From Ruditapes philippinarum (Eukaryota), in assembly GCF_026571515.1 (NCBI RefSeq), contig NW_026860876.1, positions 124,001 to 188,000 on the forward strand: a stretch of 64,000 nucleotides of DNA. Direction: 5' to 3'. A model generated the notes under the pieces. That model worked only from the letters and a program-made list of their open reading frames with translations. It searched no databases and was not told the DNA's origin. Shown here in pieces: positions 8,574-62,367 of this stretch. The translations under genes were made by a program, and so were the position numbers. Each line of letters opens with the position of its first letter. Position 1 is the first letter of the stretch.

Positions 8574-9280
8574 CTAATGCGATTGTAGGCTTTTCAGCAA
8601 ACGAACATAATAAGCGAATGCGTTATCAAAACATTCTCTTTGTGTCGAAGAAGATGTACAGATAAGTTGCCGTTTTTCGATAGGTGACTTAATTGAAATT
8701 CCAATGTTTGACTTTAAATCATTGTTGTTGCGTCCCTTATTATTATTCAATCCAAGAACCATTGCAATGACATTTTCCAAAGAGTTATTGTCATTTGTTT
8801 TATCCAAACCATAATCACCTGACAGAGTTACTTCTGGTAAAATTACATTTTCTAGTTCATTGTTTTTCTCGTCAGTTGCCTCGTCAGGGTTAAATAAGAC
8901 TGATTGATCGTATGTGTCTTCTTTTTCCTCTGGCGATTCATTTGCGCCTGTGTCGTCAAGAAGATTCTTCAGTATATCAATCATGCCAGCAATGTTCCTG
9001 ATGTCCTGTAAACGTGTCTGTAAATCAGATTGTGGCTTAATATCAAGATTATATCCTGTGTTCTTGTCGTTCTGAAGATGAGCAAGGGTATTCTTTCGAG
9101 TCGGAAGATTTCGTTTGCCGATATTTCGAAGAGCAACAGGGTCCATCAAACTGTCGTGCATTCTAATAAACATGGAAAGTTGAGAATAGAAACACCTTTC
9201 CGAGCTTGATCCTTCGGGACACAGTCGCGATTGTAAGGCATGAAGACTTCTTGTTAATCTCGATGATTGATTTTCTGGTC
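8574..9280 (-). CDS. Coding exon 2 (terminal) of the prohormone: two Cys-loop peptides separated by an acidic/Asn-rich spacer
   Basis: Longest ORF in the window. Acceptor tattacAG|GA at 9281/9280; G+GA makes Gly, in frame with PENQSSRLTR. The spliced CDS is 807 nt (268 aa + TAG at 8576-8574). Convertase-type sites: RLTR, GKR, RK, KR. Peptides: SLHALQSRLCPEGSSSERCFYSQLSMFIRMHDSLMDPVALRNI-GKR (9248-9120) and KR-QLICTSSSTQRECFDNAFAYYVRLLKSLQSH-stop (8669-8577). Confidence 0.9.
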
Positions 9281-12200
9281 CTGTAATATATGAATTAAAT
9301 AAAAAGTTTAAAAAATAGCAAATTCGTGTGCATAATAAGTCAAAGAATTTAATAAACTTGATATTTATAGTAACCATGTATAATCAAAACGTAAACAACT
9401 AAGCGTTAAATGTAATTACACATAAAATTCCATAACTAACATGTATGTTTGCATGGAACTTTATTCATTAGACTTTAAGTAACAAATTTTCAATTTATGA
9501 TCATTCATATTGATTCACTTAAAAAAGTCTGCCAATCTTCTAACCTATGAGTATTTTTTCACATCCAAATTGAGACTAAAAACGATAAATTGAAATAAGA
9601 GCAAAACAACTTTATCAAAGGCTAAAGAACATTTGAACGGCTTTCGTTTTTTTCCACAAAGACATCCGGATACTTAAGTCTTTAGCAACTCTTATGCATT
9701 CATTGGACGCAATAAACCTAATGGCACCGCTCATTTCACGATTAATATTCCTGAAACATGCTTTATCAGCCTCCTCGTATTTCCACAGATGCAATAATTC
9801 CCTCAAGTTAAATCCAGTCATACTAAACCATTCATTGAGCGGAGTGGTGTTAACAATTTCAAACCGTATCAATTAATATGGTCGTGAAATTTCTGCTTCG
9901 GGATGAAGCTTTTATGCAGGAGATAATATAAATTAAATTGAATGGCGATTTTAGATAATTGTTTCAAATGTTTTTTTCCCAGCTAGCATCCTATAAAATG
10001 TTACATAAGTAGAAAGGTGTGGATATTTTGTAGGTTTAACAGAAATGAGAAACATACTAATACAAACAAAGTTTATTGGATTTTAAAAGTCAGTTTTAAT
10101 GAGACTTGGTTAAAAATTAATTTCTTTCTTGTAACGATATGTAGAACATCAGCGTACACTTTCTTGTACCGTGCTTGAGTACAAACAGAGATCCGAAATA
10201 TTCTAAAGCCCCTAATAAAATATTTGAAACATAACGTTTCAAGGTTCATTTGATTAGCTTTTTTCTCTCACTACCTTTTATTTCATGAACTGAATACAAA
10301 AGGTAAACGTCATTAATATTTGTTTTGGTTGTCGTTGTTGTTGTTGCTGTGGGTGTTAGAAACTTAGTGGTCTTACATGGAATATAATGTGCATTAGATT
10401 AAGAACGGTTTACTCGGTAATGGATGTATATCAAATAACTTTTAATTACTAGAATTTTTAACAGACGTAAAGTTGAACAGTGAAATAATGGTAATGAAAA
10501 TGCTAAAACACAACCACGTGATTTATTTTCAAGTTTTATGACATTCCGAAAATTAACCGATTTCAAGTCGTTTAAACCTAAAAGACAGACATTAAAAGCA
10601 ACCAACTTGATCGTTTCCCCCTAAATAATCGTCAAATATTGAATGTAGCACTCATAATTCGATGTAACTAAACCCAAAACTAAAATTAGCGCTGGATATT
10701 TACTACAGAATATGGAGCCAGACTTAATTATTTCAGCATTGAGTGCTAAAAGTTTTAATAATATTAGTTAAAAAGCGATATTGCCGTTATTGGCGCAGTT
10801 AAACTGAATATATCGGTCCGTTTAAAAAAATGGAAAAAGGCAATTTATCCCGTGTAGGCGCGCTTAATGATAAAATATTGCTCTAAGATATTAGCTTCGT
10901 CAAGGGATAAATCGTGGTTAAATAAAGTTCATGATTGCGAAAAATAAAAACTTACTTCAAAAAACTAAATAAATTCTGAAATCAAATACGGGGTCATATA
11001 GTATGCTTTTCCGTACGCTTTGGTTTTTAAATAACTAATATTTTATAAGAATGAAATAAAACGCTAAACGAATGGTTTGGATATAAAAAACATTAGCTTG
11101 TTATAATTTTCCGTATGATATTCATATTTTCATTAAATATTAATCATCTAACTCTTTATCTTGAAACCATGAATGATTAATAGGCTGTTATAATAAGCGA
11201 CAAACGGTGGTATTAAACAAATTATTCTTCAACATTTTTCCTGTAGCCTCTGGCTTACAACACACTATAATTGAAATCTGATTACCAATATTTCATGTAA
11301 TAAATGTACAATTCCAGTTTATTAAAGGTTATTTAATACATTACTTCCAATGTCTATTTTTTATCAAAATTAAAAAGATTGTTAACACGAAAAAGGAACA
11401 CAATTTCGTTCCTTTTTAATTAGTACTTATGAAAAATTAAGAAAGAAAATTTGTATATATGTGTTACAAAATAGACATTCCAAAATTGCATTATGATTTT
11501 TAGAATAATGTTTTTCACAATAAAATAAATTATAAAATAAAATTCGTGAATTTGAAGTTTTCTTTGATAAATAAATTATTATTTTATGGAAGAGTATTTT
11601 AATAATACTCAGGAAATCAATGGTGTATATGTATGCTGAACAAAAAAAGAAATTTAATCAACTACTTTGTATAATATAAGACATTGTAAATACACTGAAA
11701 CCAAATATTATCAAATGTTCGAACCTCTTTTTCTTTGTTAATAATGGCTCAATCATTTTAGAAGTATATAAGGAATTGAATCAGGTACATGCTGTATTTA
11801 GTCCAAATTACTTTTACCCAACCGCCTACTCAATACATGTACCACCTTTGTGTCAAAATTGTAATCGTAATCTGATACAAGTTAAACTCAGCACTTAATT
11901 GGGATAAATAGTAAAATTACTATATATATATAAAGACACTGAAACCGCAAAATAGGTAATTTATATAAACTTGATGTTGTCAGAAACCATCCTATTTCAC
12001 TGAAAGTTTAAATCCGGTTATTACAACATTTTTCTAGCATGATGTTTAAAATATTCAAATCTCTGATACTTTTTTATTAGTAGACAAAATACAGTGTTCT
12101 CCTTACGGTTTATAGTGCATATTCCGTTTGACAGATGAATCATTATTATTAAAGTAATATAGATATATTGCTATTTTTGTAACAATTGCTAGTGGCTTGT

Positions 12201-15200
12201 ATGGTATCACAAACAATACATGTACATGTCAAGGTAATCTGTTGACTGTCTGTGCTAATACATATTTATTCTTGTATTTAAAGGTCTTTACATACAAACA
12301 TCAATCATGTTCTGGTTTGAACAAGAATTTGTTGGAAAGAACACACAATTACTTGAATTAGAAATATTCACACAAAAGTACATGAAATATATTTTGTTTA
12401 CGTATATCATAAGAAGCCAGCATATACGGATATTAAACTTAAGGTAAATATCTAAATGATTCAAAATAAAATGTTAACTATGTTTACTTGACAATGAAAA
12501 ATAACAGTCAAATATTTGTTTCTTAGCGAGAATTTTTTCTCTCTTTTTTATACATTTTGACAATAGTAGAACATTGATTTGATGTCATATTGTCTACATA
12601 AAAGGTTATCATCAAAATCATTTTAACGAAGGCCTGGGAAATATGTTTGGAATTCCCTTCTACGCAGTTGTAGTTGTATGAATTATTGTATGTTTGTATG
12701 TATTCATGTTGCTGTACTGTATGTGTGTGTTTGCAAATACTTGTTTTCAAATGAATCTATTTTTAACCTTTCTTTGTCCTTGTATTCGTTTAATGTAATT
12801 GTAATTTTAATATACTTGAATATACGATGCTATTTATCATTTTCTGTGTTAAGACATTACATTTGTAATAAACTTTAATCTTGCATAACTTTAACATAGC
12901 AAATGTTTTACATGAGTCAACCGATAAAGACATTAGACATAACTATATGAAAACTAGAAACAATCAAGATCAATAAATCAAAGCAAAAGAAAAATCTGAA
13001 CTGTTTATACAGCGTGTTATAGTTTATTCAAAACATGCCTGAAATTGGCTTCAGCAAAGTGTTGTTTTTTTTTCTGTTTGACATAGCTAGTGTCAAATCC
13101 ATACGTACATTGCCTGAAAGATTAATTGTTATAACATATGCTTCGTGATAAATATTTCCAGGATAAGCTAGTTACATATGGAATAAAACATGTATTTAAC
13201 AAGTTTGTTTCCAACCCAATATCTGCATATGACAAGTTATATCAGTCAAAACAGGTTAAATACTGAGCTATCAATAAGATAAGTTATTTATTGCCTACAG
13301 ATTTTTTTTTGCGCAAGGCTTCTCAATTGCTGCATTGCAGCAACATTTGATCTTGTTGCCTCCAGAGACAACGAGTTAAATAAATTAAGTAATGAATTAA
13401 CATGTGAATATTGTTTCATTTATAACATAAAAAAAAAACTATTTACAAAATTTCATTGCCGTGCTCATAGTTTAGAGCAAAGACATTTAGCGTTAATTGC
13501 TAAGTTGCAAACGCGGCACGCATTTGTCGTAAATGACATTTTCACAAATATGGTCACTATGCCGTTATTGAAATATACAGCCATATAGAAATTTTATATA
13601 TTTTATGACTATTTTAAAACAATGTAATGTTTATTATTCAGTACTTAGGCATACCCCTGCTTTATGAAACGTCATAACGGAAAACAATTTATCATTTTAA
13701 GAGACATTTTCTGAATAAGAACTACCTCAATAGCAAATAGTCGCATGGCTTATTGCAGGCTAATATACTTGAGGTTTTTATTTATTTTACTCATCCGTAA
13801 ATTAACCGTTATCATCAATCCATTCATACGCATTCGACAATTATAAGAAGAGCTTTTTTCAAACTATTTGACCGTATTTCTGAGACGGAGACGTATACAA
13901 CAAACATATTATGAAACAATTCGATCTTTTGATGATATATAGTAATTTGCAAACTGTTAAAATCGATTCCATATTTTTGAATAACTCCAATTTGCAAGAT
14001 ATTACGTTTTATTGATATTCTTATAACCGTACAAATACGATATATGAGTTTACCTGGACATTAACTTATTTCTCATTTTGTTTGCGTATTAACACTAGAC
14101 TGGCTGATTTTCCATTGGGAATTTGTTTATATTCTTGTCCGAGCGCCTCATAAATAAATAAATACATAATTTTCTGCAGACGTAGTGCATTGTTAATAGG
14201 AAAATGAATAAAAAAGGAAACAAGTGGTTTTCTTAAAGCTTTGTACTTGTATAAGAGGCCAATTTTATATACAAATAAATTCCAAGATGCTTTTGTCTAC
14301 TGATAATTTTATTTAAAGTCTTAAAGTTTCTATTAAAAGCTTGTTTTTACAGAATATATTGTCTGTTGAATTTTACTATCAATCAGCTGTCAATTTCCAT
14401 GATAAAATGTATTCAAGTAACAAAATCGCAGCTTTAAAGTTTTACTTTTGTTCTGTTTTCACTTTGCTAAAAAGATATAAAAAATAATTTGAAATGATTT
14501 CAGTAAAATAAAGACCGATCGAGGCAGTTCAATTTCGTCGTGAATATTAAATTATGAATATCACTTATATTGTTTAAAACATACATACGATAAAAGTTGT
14601 ATATTAATTAACTATAATTGAAATTTACAAAAACTCTTAACGAGTAAGTGAACATACCATTGTAATTTTCATGTCATAGAATAACATAATACAAGATAAA
14701 ATGATTTTGAATCAAGTAATTTATGAAAATAAAAAACCTGGTCTTTTACTTTTTCTTTAACATCTTACTTTGACATCTTCGTTGACATTTCTAAAGAAAA
14801 AGAACGTTCAATGTAATTGCCGTTCATAAATTTGACAAGACTAAAGTTTTGGAGAGAAAAAAAGACAGATTGTTTCTTATATTGTAAATATAATAAAATT
14901 AATAATTATTCACACGTTACTTACACTTACTGTATATAACACTATTGTTTTGTTCAAGTTTTAAAGAATGATGGAAAGATATTTGTTATTTTTACATATA
15001 TCATTTAAGTGTATAAATCTATATATCTGATGCAAAAAGTATTGTTTGAATTATAAAGAAGTATAATTCCGAAATGCTTGTATGAAAAAATGGAGTAACT
15101 TATTGCCTTAAAAGCGAATGGCACATGCACAAACTTTTTGCTTAACGGATAAAACCCTACTTAAAATAGCAAAATAATATTTTGTTCCAGAACTTTTTAT

Positions 15201-15511
15201 TCTGTTTACGTACATTATTCATGTGTATTAGATAATAGAGACATTCTATGTTACAACATTTTCCTGAATCAACCTTAAAATAATGGAACCAATATAATTT
15301 TACTGTTGATAAAGTTTATTAAAATATTTCATAAGATATAGACTTATACCCTTTAAAAGCAGAATTAAAGTTGTTTCATGCTCAATTGCACTTAACTTTG
15401 ACTTTGTAATAACATTCTGTTTTAATATCTCAGTGAGATATAAACCGTATCAATTTAAGTCAAATGATATATTTATATACAAAATGAATTCATGAACTTC
15501 ATATATCTTAC

Positions 15512-15611
15512 CTTCCTCTTCTAATTCTAACGGCATTCCAAAGCATCCTAGTTGAATATTCGTCCCGGCGAGCATTATTTCAACAAATATTAATGCAAAT
15601 AAAGTTTTCAT
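15512..15611 (-). CDS. Coding exon 1 (signal peptide) of a secreted neuropeptide/prohormone precursor
   Basis: ATG at 15611-15609 opens MKTLFALIFVEIMLAGTNIQLGCFGMPLELEEE+G: basic N-terminus, hydrophobic core, likely cleavage at CFG|MP. The exon is 100 nt and ends at a strong donor GAAG|GTAAGA (intron starts 15511) in phase 1, matching the phase-1 acceptor at 9281. It is absent from the ORF track. Confidence 0.85.
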
Positions 15612-15681
15612 TTCGTTAAATTGTTCGTTGAATGTGTTGGCACCTTTTTTTTAAAATAAACTAGATCTAATTAATCTATAA

Positions 15682-15726
15682 CTATATACAAAACACGCAA
15701 AAAGATGTTTGTAAAATTCAACGTCA
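15682..15726 (-). promoter_or_regulatory. Candidate core promoter of the prohormone gene (TATA-like box plus half-CRE)
   Basis: On the minus strand, GTATATAG at 15689-15682 lies ~70 nt above the ATG, and TGACGT at 15726-15721 lies ~32 nt further up. The same stretch could instead be an intron 3' end preceding a 5'UTR exon. Confidence 0.25.
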
Positions 15727-17155
15727 CAAAAGTTTTTTCACTTTTTTCTCGTCACTCAAAGAAAGTCTTTACGTATCTTAAAAATAATAAGAATAAACCA
15801 AAACAAAACCAAAACAATGTTTTAGTTGTTATTAGATGTTTAGAAAGTATTGAATATATAGTACAGCAGTTAGTTATATTGAGCGTTATTTGACGTTAGA
15901 CGAGTAAAAGTTGTTACTTGTACAAAGAGTCATAGCCAATTGATATTGCGAGAGACGCGCTGTCGTTTTTATTTCCGATTGCCGCCATCTGAATAAATCT
16001 CCAATACTCATAAACGTTAATTCTGATTCATCCGATAATAGCAAGCGTGGGAATTTGTAGTCATTAAAGGATGATCTACAATTGCAATGAGCAGTTCATA
16101 CGTGCTGAGTTGTTATGAAAATAAAAACATCTCGGACAAAATTAAGGTTTAACATGACAAATGTCAGATTGAAAAGAATTGACAAAGCATTGCCAAAGCG
16201 ACCTTGATGATCTGCATTATTTAAACTGGTTTTGCAAAAATATATTAAGTTGATAAATAAGCACAGTACTAATCCGTTAAATAATTATGACCGAATTTCA
16301 ATGCCATAATAAACATTTGTTTCATAACACAATTATTACTAGTGCATAAATGTATACATTTTTTTTTTCTTGTATACTTTTTTATTTATATTCTGTCGCC
16401 TAAATTTTGCCATTTGTAGAACATTATGGAATAAAAACTTAATGACTAAATTTTTAATGACTGGTAAATAACGTTGTATAGTCCTTAAATAGAATCCGTC
16501 TTATGATCGCTTTTGTTCACAGTGCGCAATTTGGCGATATGGTTAAAATCATTTGCAACTCATTGGCCAATTTCCTAAACTGTTTTCTTCTGATGCTTTT
16601 TCGCAGTACATTTTTAGTGATTTTGTATTTTGTATAAAAGTCAAAATACCGATTTGGTGTAATGATATCATTTTACATTAACCATTTACATTTATTGTTT
16701 ACCCTTTTTGAAGAAGTTAATATCTATTCATTTCTCAGGCATAATATGCCTTAAACAATGTCAGAGATAACACAATGTCGAATGTCATTTGAAAAAAAAT
16801 CTCAGAGCAGATAAATTTAGTCACCTTAATTGAAAAAACATTTCTATTCGAAAATATTATACCAGGTAGTTATGGTTGTTATTTTTCTTTGTTTCTAAAG
16901 TTTCTATTTTATATTAGGAATGACGATTATAAATACGAAAAATAATTTGATAAATATCACGAAAATGTCTTTTGATAATGGCAAAAAGTTAAAATTAACA
17001 TAAATAAAAAGTAGTAACATAATTTTAGAAATACAAGCGGCAGCAAAATATAATTTGTTTCTTGATAATTGTGGATATTCTATTGCATGAAATAATTCCA
17101 ATTTTAAATGTTAGCAGATATTTCAACATTATTCAATTTAAATGTGTAACCTTGA

Positions 17156-61430: not shown

Positions 61431-62367
61431 TACTGCTGTGCAGGAACAGACTCATTAGGAGTATTAGAAGTAGAAACAGAAATATTGGCCTGAGGGGTTG
61501 CCTGCTTAGAGGAAGAGAAGTTGCTAATCTGGACAAGCGCAAGTCTTCCTCAATGGCTCTCAACTCTTTACGAAGAGTATTGAAGTTGAGGTCCTTCTGA
61601 AAAAGAAATCTAGAGGCATTTCAAGCTCTATATCACGAAGGCCTGACCACAACCTACCCCGCAGCATCTCATCCTTGGACATCCTATCAAGATTGCACTG
61701 TATACTGCTAAGCAACCTCTCCAGACGCTAACTATAATCAGCAACAGACTCTGCCACTCTCTGCTGTTCATTATAAAACTGTTCCTTCAACCTTTCAGTT
61801 GAATGAACATTACCATAAATGCCATCTAACTCATTCAAGATCTCGGGAACAGTGGCATTTTCACCTAAATGCAAAAGAACACCTCTGGCACTGCCTTTCA
61901 AAATAGATAAATATAGAATCCCTAAAGAAAGCCCAAGACTTACGAATGGCCTCCCTGATAATAAATGGTGGATAATTACCCTCATCAATGACACAATTAA
62001 CATCATAGCGCCATATCTCAAACATTGACGAGTTGTATTTCCCATCTCCTGAAAAAGAAGGTAACTCAGGGATACGGGCATGTACCAAGTCCCTATTTGT
62101 CACAAAAGACAAGTATGGTTGAGGGTTAGGCATGGGTGGAGGAATGCTATTAACAGGTGGAGGAAAGTGAACCTGATGTGTACCTGTTCTGCTGATATGT
62201 TCCCGTATAGGAGTAGGTGTAACATTAAATGTATGACTTGGGTGTACTGTATGAGGTGTACTTGCCATTGCATTAACTTGAAACTTACCAGATTTCTGTG
62301 ACTGTCTAGCAAAAAATTCCAGATCTGCATCTGAATAGTCTAAGGACTGAGTTGTACCATCCGCCAT
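61431..62367 (-). mobile_element. Decayed Ty3/Gypsy gag (PNMA-like capsid), frameshifted and truncated
   Basis: Overlapping ORF pieces join to LPSFSGDG..FEIWRYDVNC..REAIRKS/LKGSARGVLLHLGENATVPEILNELDGIYGNV..LKEQFYNEQQRVAESVADYS*RLERLL..DEMLRGRLWSGLRD..LRKELRAIEEDL, a typical Gypsy/PNMA capsid pattern. It has a stop, frameshifts and a 34-nt insertion, and no pol follows. The AT-rich 62368-64000 may be its 5' leader. Confidence 0.85.

What the first reader, a model, noticed from the sequence alone, without database searches (positions are those of the whole stretch)
8574..15611. Unassigned prohormone gene encoding two homologous C-x8-C-F loop-plus-helix peptides
Seen in sequence: a 100-nt signal-peptide exon (15611-15512), missed by the ORF track, splices in phase across a 6.2-kb GT-AG intron to the 707-nt exon, giving 268 aa. 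Convertase sites delimit a 43-aa peptide (after RLTR, ending LRNI-GKR) and a 31-aa C-terminal peptide (after KR, starting with Gln). The two align without gaps, LCPEGSSSERCFYSQLSMFIRMHDSL / ICTSSSTQRECFDNAFAYYVRLLKSL, giving C-x8-C-F-x3-[LF]-x2-[FY]-[IV]-R-[ML]-x2-S-L. The ~145-aa spacer is acidic/Asn-rich and Cys-free. Established: Gly before KR signals amidation and N-terminal Gln cyclises to pyroglutamate. Inference: each peptide forms one disulfide ring followed by an amphipathic helix, the layout of calcitonin/CRH-type class B GPCR ligands. The 10-residue ring and lack of a C-terminal Pro-amide do not match calcitonin, and I recognise no named family. This is the best candidate here for an undescribed signalling system.
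Basis: partly seen in the sequence, partly recalled or inferred. Interest (0 to 1): 0.85.

Follow-up and report, generated by a model that had tools for sequence, protein, structure and literature searches.

The report
Clam RxIamide-type neuropeptide precursor gene
This is a real two-exon clam gene for a secreted peptide-hormone precursor, but it is not an unnamed system: it is most likely the counterpart of the oyster "RxIamide" neuropeptide precursor, and it shows that this family, with its paired disulfide-ring modules, is shared by bivalves and snails.

Summary
A 100-nt first exon (15611-15512, minus strand) and a 707-nt second exon (9280-8574) join in phase across a GT-AG intron. The product has a signal peptide and an RLTR site. 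Next comes a 43-aa peptide with a C-x8-C ring that ends in LRNI-GKR, then an acidic Cys-free spacer, a KR site and a 31-aa C-terminal C-x8-C peptide.

About 45 homologues exist in bivalves (Mercenaria, Mactra, Mya, Dreissena, unionids, scallops) and gastropods (Haliotis, Nucella). All that carry a name are labelled "uncharacterized" or "hypothetical". Conservation is confined to the two peptides (mean pairwise identity 0.58 and 0.42, against 0.14 in the spacer). The two peptides are internal paralogues (hhalign 97%).

The Crassostrea gigas RxIamide precursor (Stewart et al. 2014) has the same layout: a basic cleavage site, then C-x8-C, then 17 residues, then DPVEYRNIGKR, and a terminal C-x8-C module. 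It also carries six short DFRNIamide copies, and mass spectrometry has shown its amidated peptides. I compared it by eye only, because the oyster sequence has no reference id.

No similarity to calcitonin, CRH or insulin was found. No RNA evidence could be obtained for this species. The scan has not reported this family on other DNA. Modest novelty: a new member of a known kind, with a wider range and an unnoticed conserved architecture.

The parts
15683..15688 (-). TATA-like element about 72-77 nt upstream of the ATG; putative core promoter
   Evidence: Sequence. The block is conserved with the paralogue's upstream region (TGTATATAG against TGCATATAA). Its function is inferred.
15512..15611 (-). 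Exon 1: start codon, signal peptide (about 25 aa, predicted cut after ...GCFG) and start of the acidic propeptide; 33 codons plus 1 nt (phase 1)
   Evidence: 48% identity to the N-terminus of Mercenaria LOC123536483. The family shares a G|[hydrophobic]-P junction. The paralogue has the same exon.
9281..15511 (-). Intron, 6231 nt, GT...AG
   Evidence: No internal repeats of 40 nt or more. No RNA evidence was obtainable.
9249..9280 (-). Start of exon 2: rest of the propeptide (G)PENQSSRLTR, ending in the furin-type RLTR site
   Evidence: A basic site at this position in 34 of the 35 members that hold this part.
9120..9248 (-). Peptide 1, 43 aa: 9-residue lead, C-x8-C ring (Cys codons 9221-9219 and 9194-9192), predicted helix, tail DPVALRNI
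   Evidence: Mean pairwise identity 0.58. Both Cys, the Pro after the first Cys, and D, R, I of the tail are invariant or nearly so. Helix at residues 26-44 and 47-51, pLDDT about 84-87.
9111..9119 (-). Gly-Lys-Arg: amidation donor plus dibasic cleavage site
   Evidence: Invariant in all 30 aligned members. The homologous oyster end was found amidated by LC-MS/MS (AVQDPVEYRNI-amide).
8676..9110 (-). Spacer, 145 aa, acidic, Asn-rich and Cys-free, with one moderately conserved predicted helix (residues 83-111 = 9032-8946)
   Evidence: Composition. Identity 0.14. Length in the family ranges from a handful of residues (about 6, scallops) to about 145 aa. Helix.
8670..8675 (-). Lys-Arg cleavage site before peptide 2
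   Evidence: KR or KK conserved in bivalves; an RxR-type site in gastropods.
8577..8669 (-). Peptide 2, 31 aa, N-terminal Gln, C-x8-C ring plus predicted helix, not amidated; internal paralogue of the ring-helix part of peptide 1
   Evidence: hhalign 97%, E 1e-10. Identity 0.42. Helix 213-233, pLDDT 86-89.
8574..8576 (-). Stop codon TAG

Best explanation
The locus is a two-exon gene of a heterodont clam (closest named relative: Mercenaria). It encodes a secreted neuropeptide or peptide-hormone precursor and is homologous to the oyster RxIamide precursor.

Inferred processing: after the signal peptide is removed, convertases cut at RLTR, GKR and KR. This releases two products. The first is a 43-aa peptide whose Cys pair closes a 10-residue ring that staples the start of a helix, and whose C-terminus is amidated to ...DPVALRNI-NH2. 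The second is a 31-aa C-terminal paralogous ring-helix peptide, probably with pyroglutamate at its N-terminus.

The amidated RNI tail is the most conserved element. It is also the part that oysters have copied six times as short DFRNIamides, so it is the likely receptor-recognition core, acting on a still unknown receptor (most likely a GPCR). The ring-helix modules are also under purifying selection and are either part of the long ligand or co-released partner peptides.

Shown: the gene structure in the sequence, conservation of the family, the internal duplication, the predicted helices, and amidated RxIamide peptides in oyster ganglia (literature). Inferred: splicing and processing in this species, the disulfide pattern, the active part and the receptor type.
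For: Gene model.

Family: about 45 members in Bivalvia and Gastropoda. Conservation is confined to the peptides. GKR is invariant and C-x8-C is kept in every copy that is present.

Protein language-model neighbours are all neuropeptide precursors, though scores are below 0.9, so this is a lead only.

Oyster RxIamide precursor: TKR, then 4 residues, then C-x8-C, then 17 residues, then DPVEYRNIGKR. The clam family has 14-18 residues at that place. The region after the ring shares 14 of 30 residues with Haliotis and the pattern C-I-x-x-Y-[LF]-S with scallop. The precursor ends in LLC-x8-C-A-D..., like peptide 2. LC-MS/MS detected the amidated AVQDPVEYRNI and all six short copies in ganglia. Expression in visceral ganglia is tied to early gametogenesis.

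dN/dS between the gene and its in-genome paralogue: 0.12 for ring plus helix, no non-synonymous change in the tail, 0.43 in the spacer.
Against: The link to oyster RxIamide rests on an alignment by eye. The oyster sequence exists only as text in a paper supplement, so it was not scored formally. Database-wide searches did not return it.

This clam has no short tandem RxIamide copies and no internal basic site corresponding to the oyster RLRHR cut, so its amidated product must differ in size from the oyster peptides.

No transcript, tissue or peptide data exist for this species. The scallop ganglion catalogue did not list the scallop member, so neural expression is not certain outside oysters.
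Confidence: 0.72

Rival explanations
1. One reading: each ring-plus-amphipathic-helix peptide is a long helical ligand of a class B (calcitonin/CRH-type) GPCR, and forms a signalling system of its own.
For: The predicted helix begins inside the ring, as in calcitonin-type peptides. The helices are moderately amphipathic (muH 0.45 and 0.40; 3.5% and 6.7% of shuffles reach this). The ring-helix part is conserved and under purifying selection. At 43 aa with a C-terminal amide, peptide 1 is in the size range of CRH and calcitonin.
Against: No Pfam hit to Calc_CGRP_IAPP, CRF or DH31 families in any of 30 members. No PDB sequence or fold relative. The ring sits 3-10 residues from the N-terminus rather than at residue 1-2. 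The end is Ile-amide, not the ...SP-amide of mollusc calcitonins, and scallop has separate calcitonin genes. Oysters cut the tail off and have multiplied it as 8-9-residue amides, a pattern typical of short-peptide receptors.
Confidence: 0.12
2. An independent mollusc family that only converges on an ...RNIGKR end, and is not homologous to oyster RxIamide. It would then be an unnamed prohormone family.
For: Searches with a single sequence and with profiles never returned an oyster protein. The oyster comparison is by eye only. The oyster precursor has six short repeats that no member found here has.
Against: The shared features are many and in the same order: basic site, C-x8-C, 17 against 14-18 residues, D-P-V-x-x-R-N-I-G-K-R, acidic spacer, basic site, and a final C-x8-C-x-D at the C-terminus. 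Both are bivalve genes.
Confidence: 0.1
3. The ring modules are not ligands. They would be carrier or sorting domains for the RNIamide tail (as neurophysin is for vasopressin, or like the conserved Cys tail of luqin precursors). Alternatively, the two Cys-bearing chains are cross-linked to each other as an insulin-like two-chain hormone.
For: The order signal, Cys peptide, long excised spacer, KR, C-terminal Cys peptide resembles the B-C-A layout of insulin. Conserved Cys-bearing C-terminal pieces of unknown function occur in other mollusc precursors, such as luqin and PKYMDT.
Against: There are four Cys rather than six, and no CC motif. Pro and Gly inside each ring fit a closed loop. The AlphaFold2 models show no packing of the two helices (pTM 0.23-0.24).
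Confidence: 0.06

Closest known systems
Crassostrea gigas RxIamide neuropeptide precursor (EST HS206944; Stewart et al. 2014, PMC4200219)
   Same: Signal peptide, then a propeptide ending in a basic site, then a C-x8-C ring, then 16-17 residues, then DPVxxRNI-GKR. An acidic spacer follows, then a basic site and a C-terminal C-x8-C-x-D module at the very end of the precursor. The R-x-I-amide end has been shown by mass spectrometry in the oyster.
   Different: The oyster has six tandem short xDFR(N/S/Q)I-amide copies in the spacer, and an RLRHR site that frees the tail as an 11-mer. The clam has neither, so its amidated product would be the whole 43-mer. The oyster peptide 2 tail is shorter (10 residues after the ring, against 18).
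Mollusc calcitonin-type peptides (e.g. the scallop peptides listed in PMC5996578)
   Same: A disulfide ring of similar size (x6-x8) followed by a helix and a C-terminal amide. There are often two related peptides per precursor.
   Different: In calcitonins the ring starts at residue 2, the peptides are about 32 aa long and they end in ...SP-amide. There is no detectable sequence similarity, and the calcitonins are encoded by separate genes in scallop.
PXRX family (De Oliveira et al. 2019, PMC6425005)
   Same: A conchiferan-only precursor family with four conserved Cys predicted to form two disulfides.
   Different: Its defining P[FM]R[WY] motif is absent from all 44 sequences examined here.
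Insulin/relaxin precursors
   Same: Layout: signal peptide, Cys-bearing peptide, long excised spacer, dibasic site, C-terminal Cys-bearing peptide.
   Different: Four Cys instead of six or eight. No CC-x3-C-x8-C or C-x11-C pattern. The first peptide is amidated. No sequence or fold match.

Membership tests
RxIamide neuropeptide precursor | Peptide ending R-x-I followed by Gly and a dibasic site (R-x-I-amide) | tested here: met
   LRNI-GKR at 9131-9111. I, G, K, R are invariant in 30 members. Oyster peptides.
RxIamide neuropeptide precursor | Long first copy: C-x8-C, then about 17 residues, then D-P-V-x-x-R-N-I-G-K-R | tested here: met
   Window: C-x8-C, 16 residues, then DPVALRNIGKR. Oyster: C-x8-C, 17 residues, then DPVEYRNIGKR. 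Compared by eye.
RxIamide neuropeptide precursor | C-terminal C-x8-C module that ends the precursor | tested here: met
   Window peptide 2 against the oyster ...LLC-x8-C-ADRIASNTYI end. Compared by eye.
RxIamide neuropeptide precursor | Several tandem short xDFRNIamide copies. This is a feature of the only described member, not necessarily of the family. | tested here: not met
   None in any of 44 homologues. No DFRNIGKR-coding site in the whole genome.
RxIamide neuropeptide precursor | Statistically significant sequence similarity to the oyster precursor | not tested
   The oyster sequence is available only as text in a supplement, with no reference id, so the scored comparison was left out.
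RxIamide neuropeptide precursor | Expression in ganglia and detection of amidated peptides | not testable with these tools
Calcitonin/DH31 | Sequence match to Calc_CGRP_IAPP or DH31-type profiles | tested here: not met
   0 of 30 members. No PDB relative.
Calcitonin/DH31 | Ring at the N-terminus of the mature peptide, and a C-terminal Pro-amide | tested here: not met
   The ring starts at residue 10 of the predicted 43-mer and the end is Ile-amide.
CRH/DH44/ELH | Match to the CRF profile; linear peptide without Cys | tested here: not met
   No Pfam hit. Two invariant Cys.
Insulin/relaxin | Six or more Cys in the B- and A-chain patterns | tested here: not met
   Four Cys, as 2 x C-x8-C. No Pfam or PDB hit.
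PXRX | P[FM]R[WY] motif together with four conserved Cys | tested here: not met
   The motif is absent from 44 of 44 sequences. Four Cys are present.

The most novel reading that the evidence does not exclude
The twin disulfide-stapled helix modules are the ancestral hormones of this family, conserved since before bivalves and gastropods split. On this reading the whole 43-aa ring peptide with its RNI-amide tail, and the separate C-terminal ring peptide, each act on a receptor. The short oyster RxIamides, the only products studied so far, would be a derived minimal form. The known RxIamide system would then hide a second, overlooked class of long structured ligands.
Probability: 0.25. Interest if true: 0.6.

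Novelty: new member of a known kind. Interest (0 to 1): 0.38.

Why it matters

This locus and its relatives show three things:
- The family spans at least pteriomorph, palaeoheterodont and heterodont bivalves, and vetigastropod and caenogastropod snails.
- Its conserved core is a duplicated C-x8-C ring-helix module plus a DPVxxRNI-amide tail.
- The oyster short repeats are probably a lineage-specific multiplication of that tail.

This gives receptor-deorphanisation work defined long and short candidate ligands. It also assigns a set of "uncharacterized" mollusc proteins to a family, among them a scallop gene that the scallop neuropeptide catalogue did not list. It is a useful annotation and a modest evolutionary insight, not a new kind of signalling system.

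Tried and rejected
- **Spliced model.** As the operators required, the joined exon 1 + exon 2 model was never built or searched. Each exon was used by reference.
- **Known families and folds.** Pfam on the window protein and on 30 members gave nothing relevant. A PDB sequence profile search gave one chance hit at E 0.42. Foldseek against the PDB gave nothing. ESM Atlas structure neighbours were meaningless because the stored models have low confidence.
- **CRF and calcitonin in the clam genome.** Pfam CRF and Calc_CGRP_IAPP scans gave only chance hits: a mitochondrial-carrier exon and a non-coding stretch.
- **Do peptide 1 and peptide 2 bind?** Complex prediction returned "no answer" (score 0.02). 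This is not evidence for or against binding.
- **More relatives.** A metagenome scan confirmed no locus.
- **Literature.** Full-text searches for sequence motifs and LOC identifiers found nothing. The motif was absent from the supplements of the scallop, De Oliveira, Thiel and Reishia papers. PXRX sequences could not be found in the held supplements.
- A scored alignment of the oyster RxIamide precursor against the family profiles, because that sequence has no reference id.
- **Antimicrobial peptide reading.** Rejected because the peptides are near neutral and too conserved.
Full report
**What is in the sequence**

On the minus strand an ATG at 15611 opens a 100-nt exon that encodes MKTLFALIFVEIMLAGTNIQLGCFGMPLELEEE plus one base. 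A GTAAGAT donor follows at 15511. After 6231 nt, a T-rich tract and an AG (9282-9281) precede an exon that runs to a TAG at 8576-8574. The split codon G|GA keeps the frame of the only long ORF in the region. At 269 stop-free codons, this is by far the longest open stretch in the whole 64-kb window, which is about 30% GC; the next is 184.

I numbered the exon 2 translation from its first whole codon:
- residues 1-10: PENQSSRLTR
- residues 11-53: a 43-aa peptide with Cys20 and Cys29
- residues 54-56: GKR
- residues 57-201: a 145-aa spacer (26 D+E, 14 K+R, 23 Asn, no Cys)
- residues 202-203: KR
- residues 204-234: a 31-aa peptide starting with Gln, with Cys207 and Cys216

**Is the gene real?**

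The support is therefore comparative.

The exon 2 translation finds full-length homologues. The annotated Mercenaria mercenaria protein LOC123536483 (267 aa) begins MKNLLILLSVDVLLAGTTIYMGCFGLPIQ.... Exon 1 of the window aligns to its residues 1-33 at 48% identity (E 3e-11 for that comparison). The distance from the GCFG motif to the RLTR site agrees within one residue. Other members, such as P0005 and P0009, carry a signal peptide and both peptides on contigs of only 1.0-1.5 kb. That suggests a cDNA origin, but this is an inference.

The same genome also holds a paralogue on another contig. It has a 100-nt first exon (MKIFGVLVMFEVTFTWKTIHLGCFGMSIEEAEE), the same GTAAGAT donor, an intron of about 10 kb and the same CAG|GA acceptor. 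The two-exon structure is therefore conserved.

**The family**

Three word-indexed searches and one exhaustive phmmer search gave about 45 sequences. The named sources are:
- heterodont and related clams: Mercenaria, Mactra antiquata, Mya arenaria, Dreissena polymorpha
- unionids: Sinanodonta, Potamilus
- scallops: Mizuhopecten, Ylistrum
- gastropods: Haliotis rubra, H. rufescens and Nucella lapillus

All that carry a name are labelled "uncharacterized" or "hypothetical". None of 30 members hits any Pfam family.

In a 30-sequence alignment the invariant or nearly invariant positions are the four Cys, the Pro after the first Cys, and D, V, R, N, I, G, K, R of the tail. Mean pairwise identity is 0.58 in peptide 1, 0.42 in peptide 2, 0.14 in the spacer and 0.18 in the propeptide. 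Spacer length ranges from a handful of residues (about 6) in scallops to about 145. C-x8-C spacing is kept in both modules in every sequence that contains them, and a basic site upstream of the ring is kept in all but the truncated paralogue P0004.

Profiles of the two peptides align without gaps over 28 columns at 97% probability (E 1e-10), so the two modules are an internal duplication.

AlphaFold2 models of the scallop protein and of the window exon 2 product put a helix from about three residues before the second Cys to the end of each module. pLDDT is 70-89 there, the spacer is disordered, and the two helices do not pack against each other (pTM 0.23-0.24). The helices are moderately amphipathic.

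**Which family is it?**

Full-text searches for motifs and gene identifiers found nothing. A search of supplementary files for RNIGKR then turned up the Crassostrea gigas "RxIamide" precursor (EST HS206944). It appears in the reference set of an abalone paper and in the original paper by Stewart et al. 2014.

Its order of parts is: signal peptide; propeptide ending TKR; four residues; C-x8-C; 17 residues; DPVEYRNIGKR; an acidic stretch; six tandem xDFR(N/S/Q)IG(K/R)R units; then ...LLC-x8-C-ADRIASNTYI at the C-terminus. The window protein has the same order: a basic site, C-x8-C, 16 residues, DPVALRNIGKR, an acidic spacer, KR, and a terminal ...LIC-x8-C-FDN... module.

After the ring the oyster sequence shares C-I-x-x-Y-[LF]-S with scallop. 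By my count it shares 14 of 30 positions with Haliotis, including the R-L-R cluster.

I take this as homology with about 85-90% confidence, but it is an alignment by eye. The oyster sequence has no reference id, so I left out the scored comparison.

What the papers say about the oyster gene:
- The family was named in 2014 as one of three new oyster neuropeptide families.
- All seven predicted amidated peptides, including AVQDPVEYRNI-amide cut after RLRHR, were detected by LC-MS/MS in ganglia.
- The transcript is expressed in visceral ganglia and is higher in early gametogenesis. [quoted passage not shown]
- The scallop catalogue reported the other two oyster novelties in scallop but not RxIamide. 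LOC110448393 is nevertheless a clear member of the family found here.

**How it probably works**

Shown in oyster: the R-x-I end is amidated and the peptides are made in ganglia.

Inferred here: the clam precursor is cut at RLTR, GKR and KR. The clam has MHD where the oyster has its internal RHR site, so the amidated product should be the whole 43-mer. Gastropods have RLRK at that place and may release a shorter tail.

The tail is the most conserved part, and it is the part oysters multiplied. I therefore take it to be the receptor-recognition core. No oyster-type short copy is encoded anywhere in this genome.

The ring-helix part is not a mere spacer. It is strongly conserved across classes. 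Between the window gene and its old in-genome paralogue (dS about 0.4-0.7), dN/dS is 0.12 for ring plus helix, against 0.43 for the spacer, on small counts. Whether it extends the ligand, acts alone, or helps sorting cannot be decided here.

**Other families considered**

- Calcitonin: scallop calcitonins are separate peptides with rings of x6-x8 that start at residue 2 and end in ...SP-amide.
- CRH/DH44 and insulin patterns fail in the same way.
- PXRX, a conchiferan family with four Cys: its defining P[FM]R[WY] motif is absent from all 44 sequences.
- Foldseek found no analogue.
- The language-model neighbours are a mixed set of neuropeptide precursors at scores below 0.9. That fits the general class but no particular family.

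**Verdict**

The claim of an unnamed system is not: this is a divergent member, probably the orthologue, of the RxIamide precursor family. Three points are new and modestly interesting. The family is much wider than thought. The twin ring-helix architecture is the conserved, probably ancestral, state. And clams deliver the RNI-amide tail on a long structured peptide rather than as short repeats.

Noticed in passing
G000:C4829, exon 1 at 79539-79638 (+) (L007:1501-1600) and exon 2 at about 89726-90168 (+) (L002:1553-1965): An old truncated paralogue of the window gene. The first-exon structure and splice sites are the same, and the ring, helix and DPVALRNIGKR are intact. The RLTR site has changed to RVTG. 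Homology stops in mid-spacer, the ORF ends ...LFSLIKK, and no peptide 2 was found. An independent JGI contig protein (P0004) ends the same way, so this is not an assembly slip. dN/dS in the ring-helix part is 0.12, which suggests the copy with peptide 1 only is or was functional.
   Followed up: partly
window 15612-15760 (-) against L007:1350-1500: Conserved blocks upstream of the two paralogues' start codons: CTGACGAGAA...TGAAAAACT about 150 nt upstream, a TATA-like element 72-77 nt upstream, and a conserved 5'UTR-like AAAGGTGCYAACA...TTCAACGAA...TTTAACRAAATG. These are candidate promoter and leader elements.
   Followed up: partly
window 8946-9032 (-): The otherwise divergent spacer holds one predicted helix (residues 83-111, ...LQTRLQDIRNIAGMIDILKNLLDD, pLDDT 65-76). 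It is recognisably conserved among the long-spacer clams, and perhaps echoed by ...VYDDLLKA... in the oyster precursor. Function unknown.
   Followed up: no
window 61861-62367 (-): The second-longest ATG/GTG/TTG-started ORF of the window (168 aa), with no Pfam match. It lies next to the stretch that another note of this scan (s1-807837) reads as a miniature LTR element.
   Followed up: partly
family-wide (signal peptides; window 15537-15611): The heterodont members carry a charged residue (E, D or K) in the middle of the signal-peptide hydrophobic core (FVEIML, SVDVLL, LIKLML, MFEVTF). This is unusual but conserved. The predicted cut, G|[hydrophobic]-P, is shared by bivalves and gastropods.
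   Followed up: no
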